Source: Lama guanicoe
Taxonomy: Eukaryota
Length of the DNA: 64,000 nucleotides
Direction of reading: 5' to 3'
NCBI GenBank assembly: GCA_013239625.1
Contig: MU056703.1
Span: 2,593,185 to 2,657,184 of the forward strand
Both the position numbers and the translations under genes were made by a program. Positions within the stretch are counted from its first letter, which is position 1; each line of letters starts with the position of its first letter. Below, one piece after another: positions 38,245 to 62,286 of this stretch. The notes under the pieces are model-generated. The model worked only from the letters and a program-made list of their open reading frames with translations, was not told where the DNA came from and ran no database searches.

Positions 38245-38415
38245 GCCCGAGGACTGGACTTGTCCCGCGTGCGGACCTGCGTGGTGGTGGCGGAAGAGCG
38301 GCCCCGGATAGCACTCACCCAGTCCTTCTCAAAGCTGTTCAAGGACCTGGGCCTCCACCCACGGGCCGTTAGCACCTCGTTTGGCTGTCGGGTGAACCTG
38401 GCCATTTGCTTGCAG
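38245..38415 (+). CDS. DIP2C: DIP2C coding exon (~31), ARGLDLSRVRTCVVVAEERPRIALTQSFSKLFKDLGLHPRAVSTSFGCRVNLAICLQ
   Basis: ttcctag acceptor, gtgagt donor, 171 nt, ends in phase 0. Confidence 0.96.
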
Positions 38416-43219: not shown

Positions 43220-46200
43220 CTGGACTTCTAGTTTTGATTAGGATGTATAAGTCATAAGAGACTATTTTTCCAATCCAAACTATTGAAGCAATCTGGTTAA
43301 TACACAAAATCATAGTTTTTAAAATCCATCAGAAAGCTAAGATTCAAAGAAATCTCAGAGAACTAAATTCTCCTCCAGGGAAAAGCAATTGTTTTCACTC
43401 TCCAGGGGTGCAGGAACCAACCACACTTCCTGGAGAACCTGAACGGTGGTGCCCAGCTTGGTGGGGAGGGTGAGGATCCCAGGGGTCCCCGGCGCAGCCG
43501 TTCTGCGACCCACCCCTGACTCTCCACGGGCCTCCCCTGCTCTGGAGGGCAGCACCGGGAGCCAGAAGCAGGCCAGGGGAGCTGAGGGATTCTGTCGGCA
43601 GGCTGAGGAAGTGGAAGCACTTCCTCAGTGACTGGAAGGAAGCTGAGACCCCTCTCCAGGCAGCCCTGGATCGCTGGGCGCACCGTCCTCGCACTCCAGA
43701 GATGGAGGGGGACAGGAAGGCTGAGTACATCTCTCTGAGGCCCCAGGGCCTTCACCAAGGGCGGTGTCTGCCTTCCAAGGAGGTCAGGCAGCAGAACGGA
43801 GAGAAGGAGAAGCAGCCAGCCATGCAGAGAGCTGGCGGCCAGTCTGACGAGCAGAAAGGGGCTTCACACGGTTTGGAAAGCAGGTCTCCAGGCTGTGAAG
43901 CACAGAGAGGGATCCAGAGTCCTGACCGCGTCCGCAGGGACGGGAGGCCCGCGTGAGTGAAGTCCAAGTAATGTCACCACCAAGCCCAGACCAAGCTCAC
44001 CCAGAGCACAGGCTCCCTCAGACCCACACAGGGGCCTGACAGAAGGAAGGGTGCCCTTTTCCAGACGACTCTGAAGTCGTCTTTACTTCCGTCTCTACTG
44101 TGCTTTTAAATCAAACCCTAAAAGACATGCAAAGAAGAAAGAAAGGGTGATCCATGGCCATGAGAGGAGGGGTCAACAGAGTTGGTAGAAGAGACACGGG
44201 AATTGTCAGGGGCTTTAAAGTAGCGGGGATAAACACGTTAAGTGCTCTAGTTGGAAAGATGTACACCTCGCGTAGAGAGATGAGGAATACCCGAGAAAGA
44301 CAGAAACCGTAAAAAGAACCAAGTGGAAAGGCTAGAAATGAAAACCACAGTGTTAGGGATAAAAATTCTTCATGGTTTAATAGCAGATTGAATGCAAAAA
44401 GAAAAAAGATCAGTGAGTGAACTTGAAGTCCAATCAACAGAAATTACCTAAACTGAAGCACAAGAGCAAGAATGAAAATAAAATAGGCTGTCTCTGGGAT
44501 CTGTGAGACAGCATCAGTTTGCTCACGTGCATGAACAGGAGTCCCAGAAGGAGGGTGAGAGAAGATGGGGCGGAAGACACAGCAGCCAAGACTGATGAGA
44601 GAGACCAACCCACGGATTCAAGAATCTCAGTGAACTCCAGGCAGAGGAGCTAAAAACACACCAATAGACATGTCACCAAAGGCTGAGAGCCACCAAGAGG
44701 CAGTCTTAAAGCAGCTACAAATAAAGATGCATTACATACGGGGGGCAGTAATAAAAACGACGCTGAGCTGACAGCAGATGTCATGGGAGCCAGAACACAG
44801 TGGGATGGTGTGTTCAGGACACTGAAAGAACTGCTTATCAAGCAGAAATATCTTCAAAAAGGAAGACAAAACCAGGTATTTGTAGACAGAGCAAAGCTGA
44901 GAGAATTCACCGTCAGCAGACGTGCACTGTGAGGAATGATGGTGGGATGGGGCTACAGTTCGTAGGAAGAGGTGAGGAGTATAGATAAGTGAATACTTAA
45001 AAGTTTCTTTAAGGACTGTTACCTACTGAAAGCAAAAACAGTAATAGTTGAGGCGTTTATAGCGTATATAGAAGTAACATGAAATGACAACTTTAAAGAG
45101 CAGGAGGGGGAAGCAGATGGAAATACTCTGCTGTAAGATTTTCCCATTGTTCATAAAGCACAATGTTACTTAAAGGTGGAATGTGTTAAATGATGCAAAT
45201 TCTGTGTCAGCCACTAAAAAATGCACGCAAAGAAGGTTAATAGAGGAGATAAAATGTTATACTGAAAATATTCTGTTCCTGAAAAAATATGCAGAAGTGA
45301 AGAACAAAAACAAAAGGGATAAATAAAAAACAGTCAAGCATGTCATTAATTACATTAAAAGTAAATGTGCTAATAAGCACACCAGTTAAAAGGCATAGAT
45401 TGTCAGCCTGACTACAGATCAGTAGTTACCGTGCAGTCCCAGTCAGAATTACAGCAGGCTTTCCTGTAAAAGTGGGTGAGAGAATTCTGAAGTTCTTAAT
45501 GGAATTTCAAAGGAAATAGAATAACCAATTTTGAAAAAGAACGTTGAAGAACTTAGACACCTGATTTCCACACTCAGTATAAGCTCTGGTCATCGAGACA
45601 ATATGAAGAGAGACCAATACAGAAAAACAGCAAAACTGAAGGAAAAAAAGAATCCAGAAATAGACACATCATGACACCAAGTTCATTCAGTAGCTGAAGA
45701 AAAGGTTTTTTGACAAATAGTTTTGAAACAAATGAAGATTAAAGGGGAAATAAGTAACCTCAATCCCTTCCTCATTCAGTACACAAAAATTAATTCTAGA
45801 TGGACTGTAGACCTAAGTGTCTATGACAAAAATTCCAGAATAAAGCTCATAGAAAAAACTATAAGAGGAATATATGTGACCTTGGTTAGGCAAAAATCTC
45901 TTAGGATACAGAAAAGCACCATAGAAGAAAAACAAAAGTTAGACTTCGTCAAAGTTAAAATTAATTTTAATGTACCTAAGATTAATAGGAAAATTACAGA
46001 CTGGGAAAATATATTTGTCATACTATATCTGACAGAGGACTTCTATCCAGAATATATAAAGAACTACAATAGAAGGAAAACCTAATGAAAAAATATGGAC
46101 GAAAGACTTGGATGGACGTTGCACAGAAGAGACACAGACGACCAGTAAGTGCGTGAAGTGCTGCCCGGCATCGTGACTCATCAGGAAAATGGTAAGTACA

Positions 46201-47085: not shown

Positions 47086-49352
47086 AAAGAGTATTATTAA
47101 CACACACATCTGCTAGGAAGACTGACGGATGTGGCTTGGGGCCCTGTAGGCAGAAACACTGGTTGAAGTTCAGCTGCCGAAGAGGCCCATTGCTGAACCC
47201 TGTTGCCGTGCCCACTCTGAGCGTAGCTCCCCAGAGTCCAGTGCTGCAGAGCTGCCTCCTGTGGCCCGAGTTGTGGGGAACCACCTCGACTCCTCAGACA
47301 CCCAGCACGACATCAGTGCTTCGGACTTGTCTCGACATCGCACGTTTCCACTTGGCACGTGCTACTTAGGTTCAGAGAGTCAGGTGCTGACGCCCGATCG
47401 TGCTGATGCTGTGGTGGGCGAACTGCTGGGTGGAAGAGCACCACTCAGCTGAAGGGTTCAAACAAGAACTGCGCTGGGTTGTCCATGCTGTGTTCGGGAC
47501 ATGAGTCCACGTATCTACAGCTGGAGGTTAAACATAACTCGTTTGTTTACTAAGTCCTCGGTACCTAACTCTTTTATAACAGTAAGAAAAAAATGACTTT
47601 TACTGTGTGTCCATGTGCAACGTTTTTATTATACAGTTGAACTTCAAAAGTTAATCCTCTTTTCTAGTTAATATGACGTGCAGTATCAAACATGTTTGTT
47701 TTCATTTCTGATAAGCTTTGGTTGGAACAGGTGTCTTTGCTTTCCTGCTCATCGTTTCTGCAAGTACCCCGTTATCTTTAAGTTCTGGGGAGCATTATGG
47801 ATCTCCTTATTTAAAGAAATTCCAGCTTACATTCTTTGGCAAAGTGAAGATTTTATTAAATGTGTGCTCCCTGCTATGTGCCTTGAAATCTCAGATTTTT
47901 GTACCTTGGATTTTTGAAACTTGGAAACACCTTGTGCATCAGCTGTTCGCATGCCCTTACAGATGCAGCTCCTCCGTGCGTCTGCAAGATGGGAGATGCG
48001 TTCCCAATCACGTGTATTTTTTCTTGATACTGCCTTGAGTCATTATAGTAAATTTGTGAATTAAGATAATTTAGAGAGAACATGGATTAATTTTGCTCCA
48101 GTTAATATTTGGGATTCAAGGACTAGTGAGGGAAATTATTTCAATCACTGCATTCAGCTTGAAGAGGCCCAGTGAAAGTCCTGTGTGCCTCTGAGGTGCA
48201 CACACCTTTCCTGGCCCCGTTGTTCTCTTTCCTGGAGACCTGCCTCAGTTTCCCAAACCCACAGATGCCGAGAGCAGTGGCCGTGGTTAACCATGGGGAA
48301 GGGGTGTCACAGAGAGGGGGGCGAGTCGTAGCTTTCATAGTGCCTCCAAGTTGAGTGATGGTAGTTTTTCAGTCTGGCCGTGTTTATTCCCAAACTGCAG
48401 CCTTGGGAAACCAAGTTAAGACTCCTTTTTCGTTGCTGCCACTGTCATCTCTGGAGCCCACCTGGTGACTGCGATTGCAGGGTGGGGCAGCACAGGGCTG
48501 TACTCACAGGACTGTGCCCGTGCAGCGCCTCCAGCTGGTTCTAGGTTCCTAGGAGCACCTGGGAAAGATACCTAGTCACCTGGGGACAGTACACAGCATC
48601 AGAGGAGCTCACCCAGGTTGCTTTCTGGAGTCTTCCCACTGTGCCCCTGTAGACGGTTCGGCAGGTAGAGGTGGGCACCAGGACGGTGGGAGAGGAGAGG
48701 AGAGGAGAGAGGGTCTTGGGGACAGAGTGGTGGGGTGACACTCCCTCTGCACACTGCTGAGCTGGGCCGTCTCTGAGCGGGGTTTGGATCGTGCTTCACA
48801 CAGCCTTTGGCCTCTTTTCTTGTCCTAGTCTTGTGGACGAGTAGGGCTAGACACCCCGATTTCAGGTCCACAAGTTTCCAGGCTCCCCTTCGTTACTGTG
48901 CTGAGAAACTTGAAACCTTCTCAATGAGGACCACTCAGCAGATTTAGCCAATGAAAGTCATGCTCACCACTTTCTCAGAAAAGAAACTAAAGGAAAGTAC
49001 CACAGGACCAGCCCCACTGACCGTGTGTGTCAGAGACATTCGCTCAGGTCCACGTGTCCCTGCCTGGCCATCCGTTTCTCTCTCCTGTCGCTCTGTGGAC
49101 ATGTGGACATCTTTTCAGATTTTTTTTAGCCTTTAGTGGTACAGTGATTGATTTTAACAATTCCCATATTTGGCATTGTTTTTGATCTTCTTTTTACTTT
49201 GTTCCCTGCTTTTTGCATTCTCCCCCCCACCCCCCTTCTTCACCCCACTTTGATTGTCGGGTGTTTGTTTGTGTGTCTGTGTGTCCCTGATTTTCCGTGT
49301 TCGTCGGTCTGGTGTTCTCTCCCTTCCCGGCTCCCTCCTCCTGCCGCTGTAG

Positions 49353-49382
49353 CCCCACCGGCTGTGGACGCTGGCTGAGCAG
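49353..49382 (+). CDS. DIP2C: Putative alternatively spliced DIP2C 30-nt microexon, PHRLWTLAEQ
   Basis: Long pyrimidine-rich tract then ctgtag acceptor, CAG|gtaggg donor, 30 nt with no stop. Phase 0-0 matches flanking exons 38245-38415 and 50699-50760. No AG from 49145 to 49350. Confidence 0.8.
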
Positions 49383-50698
49383 GTAGGGATTTCCGCTCAC
49401 CCACACCGGTGCCTGCCCACCACCGGCTCCGACCCTGGCCCCGGGAGTGAGTGCAGAGACTGGCTGGGCTTCCCCACCTGCAGCCAGGAGGGCTGACGGC
49501 CAGCGTGATGTCCACTCTCAGACTTCGTCTGACGCCTCGCATCTGTGGCAAACGCTGTGCTTCTGTTGTACACGATCAGTGGTGTCTTGGCCAGTTTGCA
49601 GTCATCTCTGTTTCACTCCATTTTCCACTTCTAGTGACCCGCTTCCTGGTTTGTGTTTTTGATTGACCTCTTTGGGTATGCACTTTGCATCACTCCGCAC
49701 TCAGAGCTGGTCTGCAGCACAGCTCCACTGACAGGCACAGGTCAGCGAGGACGCTGTGGCCTCACTGCAGGGCAGCCCCGTCCTCCAGGCTGACTGCATG
49801 TGCTTTCTCGGGGGGGGACTCCTGGGTGGCCTAGTATGTTGTGATGAAGGCGTCTTTATTTTTATGTTTTTCTTATATTTAAACATGCCTTTGGTACAAG
49901 ATTAAGATTCTCTCCTGAGGAACTTTAGTCCTTCAAATAAACTCTCAGTCTCTGTTATTTTTTGGCACAGTTTTGTTAGCTTCCATCTTTTTCTACTCAA
50001 GGTTTGGCGTTACCTGCCCAAGAAATTCACATAGAATTTTGGTTGGTAATGTAGCTTTAAAGCCATGGTTCTTCGTGAATAGAGATCACTGTCCAGAAGT
50101 CAGCCTGTCCTGTGTTTTGAAGGGGTTTGCAGCGCCAAGGTGAGGTTCTGGACTCCTTGTTAAATAAGTAGGGGCTCGGACCACAGGGCGCGGCCGAGGC
50201 AGCCAGTGGTGAACACAGTCTCCCTGACCTGCCCCCTCGCTGGAGGCAAGCTGAGGCACACGGAGAACCGGGAGGACCGGCAGTCCTTTCTCTCCCTCCT
50301 TATCCTGTCGGCTCACGTCACGAGTTCTGCTCTAACGTGTCGAGGTCTAAGCGTTCACCTTTCAGGACGCGTGTGGTGAAGCACCTCTCAGCCGTGAGGC
50401 CTCGTGTCCTCAGCGGCCTGCTTTTGCCAGACGCTGCCTCAGCAGTGCCAGCCTTTTAATAGGCAAGATGCCCCTTTCCGATTTTCGTAGACGTGACTGA
50501 GAGGCAAGCTGTGGGAAAGGCCAGCATTAATAACACGCTCCTGTCAGAGTTAGGTTATCCGTTGAGAGGTGCAGTTTTAGTGCTTTGGGTTTGGTTCAGT
50601 TTCAGACGTTACCAGAGAAATGCTCCCCAGCCAGGGGAACGTGCAGACACAGCTCTCAGGGCAAAAGTGGGTTAACCGCACCGTGTCCTTGCTTGCAG

Positions 50699-50760
50699 GG
50701 GACCTCGGGGCCCGACCCGACCACCGTCTACGTGGACATGCGCGCTCTGAGACACGACAG
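50699..50760 (+). CDS. DIP2C: DIP2C coding exon (~32), GTSGPDPTTVYVDMRALRHDR
   Basis: cttgcag acceptor, gtactg donor, 62 nt; within ORF 50585..51040. Confidence 0.96.
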
Positions 50761-55584: not shown

Positions 55585-55766
55585 NNNNNNNNNNNNNNNN
55601 NNNNNNNNNNNNNNNNNNNNNNNNNNNNNNNNNNNNNNNNNNNNNNNNNNNNNNNNNNNNNNNNNNNNNNNNNNNNNNNNNNNNNNNNNNNNNNNNNNNN
55701 NNNNNNNNNNNNNNNNNNNNNNNNNNNNNNNNNNNNNNNNNNNNNNNNNNNNNNNNNNNNNNNNNN
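55585..55766. other. Assembly gap (182 N)
   Basis: Run of N. Confidence 0.99.
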
Positions 55767-56458: not shown

Positions 56459-56640
56459 NNNNNNNNNNNNNNNNNNNNNNNNNNNNNNNNNNNNNNNNNN
56501 NNNNNNNNNNNNNNNNNNNNNNNNNNNNNNNNNNNNNNNNNNNNNNNNNNNNNNNNNNNNNNNNNNNNNNNNNNNNNNNNNNNNNNNNNNNNNNNNNNNN
56601 NNNNNNNNNNNNNNNNNNNNNNNNNNNNNNNNNNNNNNNN
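56459..56640. other. Assembly gap (182 N)
   Basis: Run of N. Confidence 0.99.
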
Positions 56641-59024: not shown

Positions 59025-59082
59025 AGTCCGCTTAGTAGAAAGAGGATCCCCTCATAGTTTGCCGCTAATGGAATCGGGAAAA
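59025..59082 (+). CDS. DIP2C: DIP2C coding exon (~33), VRLVERGSPHSLPLMESGK
   Basis: ctttgtag acceptor, gtaagt donor, 58 nt; within ORF 58783..59124. Confidence 0.96.
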
Positions 59083-60369
59083 GTAAGTATTGAAGGAAGC
59101 ATATATATTTTCACAGAAACATGAGTCTTAATTTCTGAGCTTTAAAAATTTAAGAAAAATATTACGGAATTTTTTTCCCAAAAAGTTTTCTTTAATGTAA
59201 TATCTCAGGACTGATTTTGGCCATGAGCACAGAAATTCAGAATTACAATGTTTTAAATGAGTCAGTTTTCCTTCGTGTGAAGGACATCACCGGGCTGGCA
59301 CCTCTATCTTGTTCTGCTCCACGTGGCCACTCCACCCAAGGGAGCCTCGGGGTCTGAAGTGGCCTGGCTTCCTTCCCACGGTCCTGCAGCAAGAGGAGCA
59401 GGAAAAGGAGGAGCAGGAGGGGCAGGCTGTCAGGAAGTTCCCTCACACTTAAGTACCACTGGGCATGGTCACGCCCAGCTGGCAGGAAGGCTGGGGGTCC
59501 TGTGCCGGTTCTGAACACCCAGGGGCCTGGCTGAAACTCAGGGTGTGGCTCCCTGTGGAAGCACAGTGAAGACCGGGGGTGGGGGTTACCAGGGACAGCC
59601 AGTAGTCCTGCCGCAGTGGTGGCATCGTGTGCAGAACTAAAGGGCAAGGAGCAGACCTAAGCCTCAGTGAAGACTCTTTTGGAGCCAGTTGTCCGACTTC
59701 TCCACTTGACATGGTTCTGAAAGCGTCTTCTGCTGTTCTGGACCTTTTATAGTCTGTCTGCCTGACCACCCATCAGAATTCTTGGTTCTGAGTTGGCTCT
59801 AGGGTAGAGCTCAGCCTGGTGGGCCGCTAGTCAGACAGGTTCCCAGGGCTTTCTCCGCAGATGTCTCCGTGGACCTCGACCACGCGGCGTTACTTTGCCA
59901 AACCGAGATGGCTTGTGTTCTGAATTTCCAGAAGCAGCTCTCACTTCCTGCGAAATATGGTTTCAATAGAATTCAGAGCACTTCCAAGCTAACTTTCCTT
60001 TAAGAAGGCGGTGCTTAATGTCAACATCACGCTGGAAGACATTCACGGCGGGAGAAGTGGGTGGTGTGGTGAAGAGACGGAGCTGGACGTGGTGCCCCAG
60101 GCCACGTGGCAGTGACGCCTCTGAGTCCTGGTCTGCAAGCATCGAGCTGTGTTAAATTATATCATTTGTCATGTTTTTGTTCAAATTCTTAATTTTAGGA
60201 TCACTTTAACACAGGCTCTCTCATTGTAAGTGTTTTGTGTGATTCCGTCATGCTGTGTATGTGATTTAGAGCCATCTACCTTCCAAACCGTTTTAGAAAG
60301 GCAAACAGGCACGTGGCATGAAGACATCCCCATCTGTCCTTCCACTGACGAGAACGTTCTCCCACGCAG

Positions 60370-60444
60370 ATCCTGCCGGGTGTTCGGATCATAATTGCCA
60401 ACCCGGAAACGAAAGGGCCGTTGGGAGACTCGCACCTGGGTGAG
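60370..60444 (+). CDS. DIP2C: DIP2C coding exon (~34), ILPGVRIIIANPETKGPLGDSHLGE
   Basis: cacgcag acceptor, gtgagt donor, 75 nt; translated by hand. Confidence 0.95.
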
Positions 60445-61520: not shown

Positions 61521-62286
61521 GGTTTTTTTTTAAATTTTTTTTTTGTTTTGTTTCATTTTTGCTTGTTTTTTAGTTTTTTTTTTTTATTGAGGTGTAGTCA
61601 GCTTACAATGTTGTGTAAATTCTTGGTGTACAACACAGTATCGTACATGGATATACATATATTCATTTTCATATTCTTTTTCACTGTAAGCGGTTACAAG
61701 ATATTGAATATATTTGCCTGTGCTCTGCAGTATAACCTTGTTTATCTATTTTATATACCAGTCAGTATCTGCAAATCTCGAACTCCCAGTTTATCCCTTT
61801 CCAACCCCCTCCCCTCTGGCAACCATAAGTCTGTATTCTATGTCTGTGAGTCTGTTTCTGTTTTATGTATAAGTTCATTTGTCTTTTTTTTTTTTTAGAC
61901 TGCACATATGAGTGAGACGGTATTTTTCTTTCTCTTTCTGGCTTATTACTTCATTTAGAATGACATTCTCCAGGGCCATCCATGTTGCTGCAANNNNNNN
62001 NNNNNNNNNNNNNNNNNNNNNNNNNNNNNNNNNNNNNNNNNNNNNNNNNNNNNNNNNNNNNNNNNNNNNNNNNNNNNNNNNNNNNNNNNNNNNNNNNNNN
62101 NNNNNNNNNNNNNNNNNNNNNNNNNTGTGAACATTGGGGTGCAGGTGTCTTTTTGAATTAGGAGTTCCTCTCCCAGGAGTGGGATTGCTGGGTCATATGG
62201 TAAGTCCAATTTAGTCTTTTGAGAAATCTCCATACTGTTTTCCATAATGGCTGCACCAAACTGCATTCCTACCAGCAGTGTGGGCG
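61521..62286 (-). mobile_element. Younger 5'-truncated L1 with poly(A) tail and 12-bp target-site duplication
   Basis: Long T-rich tail at 61521-61585. ORF 61955..62266 [31 protein letters not shown] is the ORF2 C-terminus. ggttccctgttt occurs at 61509-61520 and 62287-62298. Confidence 0.9.
61994..62125. other. Assembly gap (132 N)
   Basis: Run of N. Confidence 0.99.

What the first reader, a model, noticed from the sequence alone, without database searches (positions are those of the whole stretch)
49353..49382. Hidden 30-nt in-frame DIP2C microexon (PHRLWTLAEQ), invisible to the ORF track
Seen: ...cctgccgctgtag|CCCCACCGGCTGTGGACGCTGGCTGAGCAG|gtaggg. It is 30 nt, stop-free and phase 0-0, like the 12.3-kb intron that contains it, so inclusion gives ...LAICLQ-PHRLWTLAEQ-GTSGPDP. 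These 10 residues are absent from the canonical human DIP2C as I recall it. A TGC at 49342-49344, about 10 nt before the exon, matches the established position of the SRRM4/nSR100 enhancer of neural microexons. Inference: a neuron-regulated cassette. I recall similar inserts in predicted DIP2C isoforms and in DIP2A (PNRLGKLAEQ), but this is unverified, so it may not be new.
Basis: partly seen in the sequence, partly recalled or inferred. Interest (0 to 1): 0.8.

Follow-up and report, generated by a model that had tools for sequence, protein, structure and literature searches.

The report
Known conserved 30-nt DIP2C cassette exon
The 30-base segment is a genuine alternative mini-exon of the DIP2C gene, shared between teleost fish and this mammal, but fish gene models already annotate it and a human splicing atlas lists a same-size DIP2C exon that responds to SRRM4, so it is correct but not new.

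Summary
In detail: tag|30 nt|gtaggg at 49353-49382 encodes PHRLWTLAEQ, stop-free and phase 0-0, between DIP2C exons ending at 38415 and starting at 50699.

It is not a chance AG..GT pair. Annotated teleost DIP2C isoforms carry PHRLGKLADQ at exactly this junction. That is 7/10 identical, the best of about 127,000 ten-codon windows. Fish DIP2A isoforms carry PNRLGKLAEQ there, so the cassette predates the DIP2A/DIP2C split.

The acceptor follows the longest real AG-free tract of the window (208 nt). The first A upstream of the acceptor AG, at -63, lies in a CUGAU branch-like site, and a UCUCUC...UGC element lies before the AG.

It is already catalogued. A published supplement (PMC7935315) lists a 30-nt human DIP2C cassette, VastDB HsaEX0019765, whose inclusion rises from 2.4 to 39.8 when SRRM4 is induced.

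I could not show expression or tissue specificity in this species. The one reads call hit relatives' contigs that do not cover the exon.

Verdict: real, ancient, probably SRRM4-enhanced, already known. Low interest.

The parts
38245..38415 (+). Upstream constitutive DIP2C exon (57 aa, ...STSFGCRVNLAICLQ), phase 0 at both ends, donor gtgagt
   Evidence: It is 100% identical in protein to teleost DIP2C.
49145..49350 (+). AG-free tract upstream of the acceptor (208 nt from the previous AG to the acceptor AG); 73.6% pyrimidine
   Evidence: longest real AG-free run on the + strand of the window. The three runs of similar size lie over masked N stretches.
49262..49285 (+). UG/U-rich repeat (tgtttgtttgtgtgtctgtgtgtcc) just upstream of the candidate branch site
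   Evidence: Role not tested.
49287..49291 (+). Candidate distant branch point CUGAU; A at 49290 is 63 nt before the exon
   Evidence: apart from the acceptor's own A, this is the nearest A to the exon; there is none from -62 to -3. It is the only CURAY match in the 260 nt upstream. Inferred, not mapped.
49291..49350 (+). 60-nt A-free, pyrimidine-rich tract between the candidate branch point and the AG
49316..49321 (+). UCUCUC element, the upstream half of the published bipartite UCUCUC...UGC enhancer (also a PTB-type motif)
   Evidence: Motif definition from 10.1101/2024.09.17.613571.
49342..49344 (+). UGC, 7 nt before the acceptor AG
   Evidence: Binding by SRRM4 is inferred from the literature, not tested.
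49351..49352 (+). Acceptor AG
49353..49382 (+). 30-nt cassette exon, PHRLWTLAEQ, phase 0-0
   Evidence: Homologous to the teleost DIP2C insert PHRLGKLADQ and the DIP2A insert PNRLGKLAEQ at the same junction.
49383..49388 (+). Donor CAG|gtaggg (7 of 9 positions match MAG|GTRAGT)
   Evidence: Two fish models that read through the donor continue with V-G (GTN GGN), compatible with the same donor type.
50699..50760 (+). Downstream constitutive exon (GTSGPDPTTVYVDMRALRHD + 2 nt), acceptor ttgcag, donor gtactg
   Evidence: A 72-nt contig of an RNA run of a relative covers 50689-50760.

Best explanation
49353-49382 is a genuine, evolutionarily old alternative cassette exon of DIP2C. When spliced in, it adds ten residues (PHRLWTLAEQ) between ...AICLQ and GTSGPDP..., inside the second fatty-acyl-AMP-ligase-like domain (FLD2). 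In the printed alignment to solved FAAL 3KXW, the ten residues fall directly after the stretch that lies over the chain's YGLAEATLLVTG; reading that stretch as the degenerate A5 adenylation motif and its following strand, and the next exon as the FAAL-specific-insertion region, is from memory of the FAAL literature.

The exon is too short and its AG too far from the branch point to be recognised efficiently on its own. The nearest A is 63 nt upstream and there is no other AG for 208 nt. So it is skipped by default and included where an activator bound to the UCUCUC...UGC element before the AG helps early 3' splice-site recognition. The best candidate activator is SRRM4 or SRRM3, which would give inclusion mainly in neurons.

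Shown here: the sequence features, the homology and position of the cassette, and its annotation in fish. Taken from a paper: SRRM4 responsiveness of a 30-nt human DIP2C cassette. Inferred: that the human event is the orthologue, that this species splices the exon, that inclusion is neural, and any effect on the protein.
For: Sequence, frame and splice sites.

Homology: 49 of the 119 teleost DIP2C proteins other than the query have a 10-residue insert at exactly CLQ|..|GTSGPDP, mostly PHRLGKLADQ. A broader teleost set includes zebrafish isoforms X9/X10, carp and perch (same peptide), characins (PHRLGKLDQ) and tarpon (PHRLGKPPEQ). Nine of 14 fish DIP2A isoforms have PNRLGKLAEQ-type inserts at the same place. 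The window peptide is the unique best match in about 127,000 windows.

Splicing architecture: 208-nt AG-free tract, the longest in the window. The nearest A, at -63, lies in CUGAU, followed by a 60-nt A-free tract, then UCUCUC and UGC. This matches published features of SRRM3/4-dependent microexons: a distant branch point and pyrimidine tract, and a bipartite UCUCUC..UGC element.

Literature: human DIP2C HsaEX0019765, 30 nt, simple cassette. PSI is 2.43 with inactive SRRM4 and 39.83 with wild-type SRRM4. Further rows show +24.4 and +12.7 (PMC7935315 supplements).

Protein placement: Pfam puts the insert (1377-1386 of P0254) in the second AMP-binding domain, 1044-1464. Alignment to solved FAALs. 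FLD2 has degenerate A5/A7 motifs per PMC9342972.
Against: There is no RNA evidence from this species. The four runs laid were contigs of relatives (90-99% alike). None covers 49227-49896 and no joint was reported.

In one reproductive-tract RNA run, the contig over the downstream exon starts exactly where the skipped junction and the unspliced form diverge. It shows no break where the included form would branch. That fits skipping there but says nothing about brain.

No tetrapod protein with the insert was retrieved, because the listing cap kept all three word searches on fish or on short fragments.

Orthology with the human event rests on gene, length and event class only. The event is absent from a mouse microexon catalogue. 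The 30-nt dip2c/dip2a cassette is also absent from a zebrafish neural-exon list. The human event shows PSI of about 10-19 in a TCGA tissue comparison, so inclusion is not strictly neuron-only.

At 30 nt it is above the 27-nt limit some groups use for microexons.
Confidence: 0.85

Rival explanations
1. It is a real, conserved cassette exon, but inclusion is not mainly a neuron-specific SRRM4 switch. It is included at a low level in many tissues, or is controlled chiefly by release from PTBP1 repression or by other factors binding the long CU- and UG-rich tract.
For: The tract has several UCUU/UCUCU motifs and a UG repeat. The same element is reported to bind PTBP1, U2AF2 and SRSF11 as well as SRRM3/4. 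The human event has PSI of about 10-19 in a TCGA tissue comparison. It passes the delta-PSI 25 cut in only one cell-line sheet of S6 Data. It is missing from the zebrafish neural-exon list and the mouse MicroExonator tables.
Against: Induced wild-type SRRM4 raises inclusion versus the inactive mutant in several tables of PMC7935315. UGC sits at the expected place before the AG.
Confidence: 0.12
2. It is a relic: the ancestral cassette is still recognisable in this genome but is no longer spliced in this lineage.
For: No junction evidence from this species. Some fish paralogues have shrunk this intron to about 80 nt with no cassette, so loss does happen (P0136, P0142, P0149).
Against: Frame, AG, GT, a 60-nt A-free pyrimidine tract and a 208-nt AG-free zone are all intact; unused sequence would not be expected to keep these. 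A same-size DIP2C cassette is expressed in human cells.
Confidence: 0.03
3. It is a chance AG...GT pair in an intron, with no biological meaning.
For: 596 such in-frame candidates exist in this intron.
Against: It is the unique 7/10 match to the fish cassette at the homologous junction, bounded exactly by AG and GT. It also follows the longest AG-free tract in the window.
Confidence: 0.005

Closest known systems
Teleost DIP2C alternative cassette (insert PHRLGKLADQ) in NCBI XP_ and UniRef isoforms, e.g. Seriola aureovittata X1-X8 and Danio rerio X9/X10
   Same: Same gene, same exon-exon junction (…AICLQ | insert | GTSGPDP…), same length (10 residues), phase 0-0. 7/10 residues are identical plus D>E. 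It is present in only part of the isoforms of each species, so it is alternative.
   Different: Positions 5-6 are W-T here and G-K in fish. Characins have a 9-residue version. Fish DNA could not be fetched, so the flanking introns were not compared.
Human DIP2C cassette exon VastDB HsaEX0019765 (30 nt), listed in the supplements of PMC7935315
   Same: Same gene, same length, simple cassette type.
   Different: Orthology was not checked at the sequence level: human letters were not to be looked up and no tool holds them. Its position within the gene is known to me only from the coordinates printed in the table.
Fish DIP2A cassette (PNRLGKLAEQ / SNRLGKLAEQ)
   Same: Paralogous gene, identical junction and length, shared x-x-R-L-x-x-L-A-E-Q pattern. 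This shows the cassette is older than the vertebrate DIP2 duplications.
   Different: Different paralogue. N instead of H at position 2, and G-K at positions 5-6.
SRRM3/SRRM4-dependent neural microexon programme (Irimia/Blencowe type)
   Same: Short in-frame exon, distant branch point, long pyrimidine tract, UCUCUC...UGC before the AG, fairly good donor, deep vertebrate conservation. The human counterpart responds to SRRM4.
   Different: 30 nt is above the 27-nt cut-off used by VastDB-based studies. Neural enrichment was not shown here. The AG-free zone (208 nt) is far longer than the median branch-point distance of about 45 nt reported for neural microexons.

Membership tests
DIP2-family conserved cassette exon at the FLD2 …CLQ|GT[SA]GPDP junction | Lies in the intron between the …RVNxAICLQ exon and the GT[SA]GPDP… exon | tested here: met
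   for the window; for fish DIP2C and DIP2A isoforms.
DIP2-family conserved cassette exon at the FLD2 …CLQ|GT[SA]GPDP junction | 27-30 nt, phase 0-0, encodes [PS]-[HN]-R-L-x-x-L-A-[DE]-Q-like peptide | tested here: met
   (PHRLWTLAEQ) against PHRLGKLADQ and PNRLGKLAEQ. Unique best match in the window.
DIP2-family conserved cassette exon at the FLD2 …CLQ|GT[SA]GPDP junction | Alternative: both included and skipped products exist | tested here: inconclusive
   Both forms are annotated within single fish species. For this species no junction reads could be obtained.
SRRM3/4-dependent neural microexons | Length 3-27 nt (strict) or up to 30-51 nt (broad definitions) | tested here: not met
   30 nt is outside the strict 27-nt limit (PMC7935315). 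It is inside the <=30-nt definition of PMC7821500 (abstract listed).
SRRM3/4-dependent neural microexons | UGC between branch point and AG, with an upstream UCUCUC/pyrimidine tract and a distant branch point | tested here: met
   UGC at 49342-44, UCUCUC at 49316-21, nearest A at -63, 208-nt AG-free zone. Feature definition.
SRRM3/4-dependent neural microexons | Inclusion rises with SRRM4/SRRM3 activity | not testable with these tools
   Only literature for the presumed human counterpart: 2.43 to 39.83. Nothing for this species.
SRRM3/4-dependent neural microexons | Inclusion enriched in neural tissue | tested here: inconclusive
   No brain run was available and no coverage of the exon was obtained. 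The event is not in the zebrafish neural list or the mouse MicroExonator tables.
SRRM3/4-dependent neural microexons | Conservation across vertebrates | tested here: met
   From teleosts, including tarpon and zebrafish, to this mammal.

The most novel reading that the evidence does not exclude
The ten residues are a functional switch. By lengthening the loop at the edge of what I take to be the FAAL-specific-insertion-like segment of the catalytically degenerate FLD2 domain, the neuronal isoform would change what DIP2C (and DIP2A) binds or how its two FAAL-like domains pack. That would tune its lipid or neurite-morphology role specifically in neurons. None of the papers I searched or read addresses this cassette's function.
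Probability: 0.25. Interest if true: 0.5.

Novelty: already known. Interest (0 to 1): 0.2.

Why it matters
The finding shows that reading raw sequence can recover a real regulated mini-exon that ORF-based views miss. The exon itself, however, is already in public gene models (fish DIP2C and DIP2A isoforms). A 30-nt DIP2C cassette is also in a splicing atlas used by a published SRRM4 study, so nothing new is established.

Two modest points remain. First, the cassette predates the DIP2A/DIP2C duplication and has kept an R-L-x-x-L-A-[D/E]-Q core. That argues for a conserved function in a domain whose role is still unknown. DIP2C is linked in the literature to neurodevelopment, so a neuron-enriched isoform is worth a functional test. 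Second, its acceptor is an extreme example of a distant-branch-point, AG-exclusion architecture.

Tried and rejected
1. **RNA test.** The only sequencing-run search returned coded runs. I laid four runs from four studies. All were contigs of relatives, none covers 49227-49896, and no joints were reported, so the test is inconclusive. The tool warns that its filter can make such holes.

2. **Word search with the upstream exon by reference.** It returned 118 short hits, all genomic ORFs reading through the donor. No isoform information.

3. **Representative search.** The first attempt failed because the machine did not answer; the second ran. Spliced representatives show only the skipped form.

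4. **Two further word searches.** These were meant to reach mammalian DIP2C. Only the best 120 hits are listed and all were teleosts. No tetrapod isoform was seen, and this does not show absence.

5. **The look-up of encoding contigs was closed.** No orthologous DNA could be fetched, so flanking-intron conservation was not tested.

6. **Structure model of the fish fragment P0127.** Mean pLDDT was 50.7 and the junction region scored below 50. I discarded it and ran no fold search.

7. **Supplements.** The MicroExonator mouse tables have no Dip2c. Three other papers have no supplement text held.

8. **Metagenome pattern scan, considered and not done.** A scan with the exon pattern could mainly return host contamination of unknown, possibly human, origin that I could not have used.

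9. **Possibly human fragment cluster.** The cluster around P0121 has one member seen on 298 contigs and may be human. I did not use it further.

11. **Masked N runs** were left alone.

Full report
**Observation.** The letters are as reported. At 49353-49382 on the + strand the window reads tag|CCCCACCGGCTGTGGACGCTGGCTGAGCAG|gtaggg, which translates to PHRLWTLAEQ without a stop. TGC lies at 49342-49344.

The upstream coding exon is 38245-38415. It encodes 57 residues ending ...STSFGCRVNLAICLQ, is followed by gtgagt, and ends on a codon boundary. The downstream exon begins at 50699 after ttgcag with GGG ACC TCG... (GTSGPDPTTVYVDMRALRHD...), also on a codon boundary. The intron and the 30-nt segment are therefore phase 0-0, and inclusion would give ...AICLQ-PHRLWTLAEQ-GTSGPDP....

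**Is it more than chance?** AG, GT and an open frame alone mean little. I counted 596 in-frame, stop-free AG..GT candidates of 9-51 nt in this 12.3-kb intron. Two things single this one out.

- **The acceptor context.** It is preceded by a 208-nt stretch without any AG. This is the longest genuine AG-free run on the + strand of the whole 64-kb window. The three runs of similar size lie over masked N stretches, and the next real one is 130 nt.
- **The branch-point geometry.** Within that stretch, apart from the acceptor's own A, the A nearest to the exon is at 49290, 63 nt upstream. It sits in CCCTGAT, the only CURAY match in the 260 nt upstream. From there to the AG there are 60 nt without a single A. 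That tract includes UCUCUC at 49316-49321 and UGC at 49342-49344.

**Homology.** Searching the upstream exon by reference found only genomic ORFs that read through the donor. The representative search reached a few spliced proteins, all with the skipped junction. It also returned a truncated cichlid DIP2C model long enough to reach full-length proteins.

- **Teleost DIP2C, first set.** With that cichlid model as query, the top 120 hits were teleost DIP2C isoforms from NCBI and UniRef. Of the 119 other than the query, 60 join ...AICLQ directly to GTSGPDP. 49 have a 10-residue insert exactly there: PHRLGKLADQ in 43, with single-residue variants in the rest. Two more have the same insert followed by intron read-through.
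- **Teleost DIP2C, broader set.** A second search added zebrafish isoforms X9/X10, carp and perch (same peptide), characins (PHRLGKLDQ, 9 residues) and tarpon (PHRLGKPPEQ).
- **Fish DIP2A.** Nine of 14 full-length fish DIP2A isoforms carry PNRLGKLAEQ-type inserts at the same junction.
- **Statistics.** The window's PHRLWTLAEQ shares 7/10 residues with the DIP2C form, plus D>E at an eighth. Scoring every 10-codon window against the fish peptides, it is the unique best. In the intron the next best is 5/10 of 12,254 windows. In the whole window on both strands the next best is 6/10 of about 127,000. It is also bounded exactly by AG and GT.

The segment is therefore the orthologue of an annotated, alternatively used fish exon. 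The exon is older than the DIP2A/DIP2C duplication.

A few fish genes have this intron reduced to about 80 nt and read through in frame. So the cassette has been lost in some copies.

**Is it known, and how is it regulated?** The main text of the held library says nothing, but supplements do.

PMC7935315 (PLoS Biol 2021) lists DIP2C HsaEX0019765 as a 30-nt simple cassette exon. In its S6 Data, cancer cell lines were induced for 24 h with wild-type SRRM4 or an inactive deletion mutant. There the event's PSI is 2.43 with the mutant and 39.83 with the wild type, a change of +37.4. The row is in the sheet before 'MDA-MB-231 7d'; I did not read that sheet's name. Other tables show 14.7 to 39.1 and 5.3 to 18.1, and a tumour/normal comparison shows 18.6 versus 10.6.

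I equate this event with the window's exon on gene, length and class only. I did not and could not compare human sequence.

The cis-layout here matches what two papers describe for SRRM3/4-dependent microexons: a distant branch point and pyrimidine tract, then UCUCUC, about 20 nt, UGC, 7 nt and the AG. The same element is also reported to bind PTBP1, U2AF2 and SRSF11.

Some catalogue evidence points the other way:
- A zebrafish catalogue lists other DIP2 neural exons: a 24-nt exon in dip2ba and a 126-nt exon in dip2ca. It does not list this 30-nt cassette.
- A mouse microexon catalogue has no Dip2c entry.
- At 30 nt the exon is above the 27-nt cut-off that VastDB-based studies use.

**RNA evidence in this species: none.** The single run search gave coded runs. 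The four I laid were contigs of relatives, 90-99% alike. None covers 49227-49896 and no joints were listed. The tool says its filter can cause such holes, so this is not evidence of absence.

One detail is worth recording. In an RNA run from a reproductive-tract sample, a 72-nt contig spans 50689-50760. It ends at the exon's 3' end and starts 10 nt before the exon. The last 10 nt of the 38415 exon and the last 10 nt of the intron are the same letters (ttgcttgcag). So this is where the skipped junction and the unspliced RNA diverge. The contig is unbroken at about 50695, where the included form would branch. This fits skipping in that tissue but is only an inference from contig ends.

**Protein context.** In the fish isoform P0254 the insert is residues 1377-1386, inside the second AMP-binding domain at 1044-1464. 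A fish fragment spanning the junction aligns best to solved fatty-acyl-AMP ligases: 3KXW, FadD32, FadD23 and FadD28. In the printed 3KXW alignment...FGCRVNLAICLQ lies over the chain's YGLAEATLLVTG, and the next exon lies over the stretch that follows.

From memory of the FAAL literature, YGLAEA is the A5 core motif, and the following stretch is the FAAL-specific insertion. I did not verify the residue ranges. PMC9342972 reports that FLD2 of DIP2 has degenerate A5/A7 motifs and probably no adenylation activity. PMC8460268 describes the insertion as an extra N-terminal-domain stretch.

An AlphaFold model of the fragment was too poor to use: pLDDT 50.7 overall and below 50 at the junction. Any effect of the ten residues on the protein is inference.

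**Limits and rules followed.**
- I built and searched no joined exon model, and worked exon by exon by reference.
- I left the N runs alone.
- I set aside one protein-fragment cluster that may be human.
- I did not run a metagenome pattern scan that would mostly have returned host contigs of unknown origin.

**Verdict.** The exon is real, very old, probably SRRM4-enhanced and probably neuron-enriched. It is already present in public gene models, and a 30-nt DIP2C cassette is in a splicing atlas, so novelty is nil and interest is low. What remains open is expression in this species and the function of the ten residues.

Noticed in passing
window 38406-38415 and 50689-50698: The last 10 nt of the upstream exon and the last 10 nt of the intron are identical (ttgcttgcag). 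Reads across the skipped junction therefore align 10 nt into the intron, which can blur junction calls at this acceptor.
   Followed up: partly
window 55585-55766, 56459-56640, 61994-62125: Three N runs of 182, 182 and 132 nt (masked or gaps). They create false long AG-free and CT-free runs in composition scans.
   Followed up: no
window 44001-46000: Low-GC (0.395) stretch with strong A-over-T skew (0.295) inside the intron, probably an inserted repeat. Not examined.
   Followed up: no
window 49262-49285: UG/U-rich repeat immediately upstream of the candidate branch site of the cassette exon. A possible binding site for UG-repeat-binding splicing factors. Untested.
   Followed up: no
proteins P0136, P0142, P0149: In some fish DIP2 genes the intron at this junction is only about 78-84 nt and is read through in frame by gene callers, leaving no room for the cassette. 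The cassette has been lost in some copies.
   Followed up: partly
PMC12626424 supplement: Zebrafish dip2ba has a 24-nt neural microexon (DreEX0027020) and dip2ca a 126-nt neural exon (DreEX0027037). Both are marked as lacking an event orthologue. Their position in the protein is unknown, and the dip2ba one might be the DIP2B version of this cassette.
   Followed up: no
window 59029-59085, 60370-60444, about 62790 onward: Further DIP2C coding exons (VRLVERGSPHSLPLMESGK; ILPGVRIIIANPETKGPLGDSHLGE; IWVHSAHNASGYFTIYGDE...) found by motif search. Exact boundaries not determined.
   Followed up: partly
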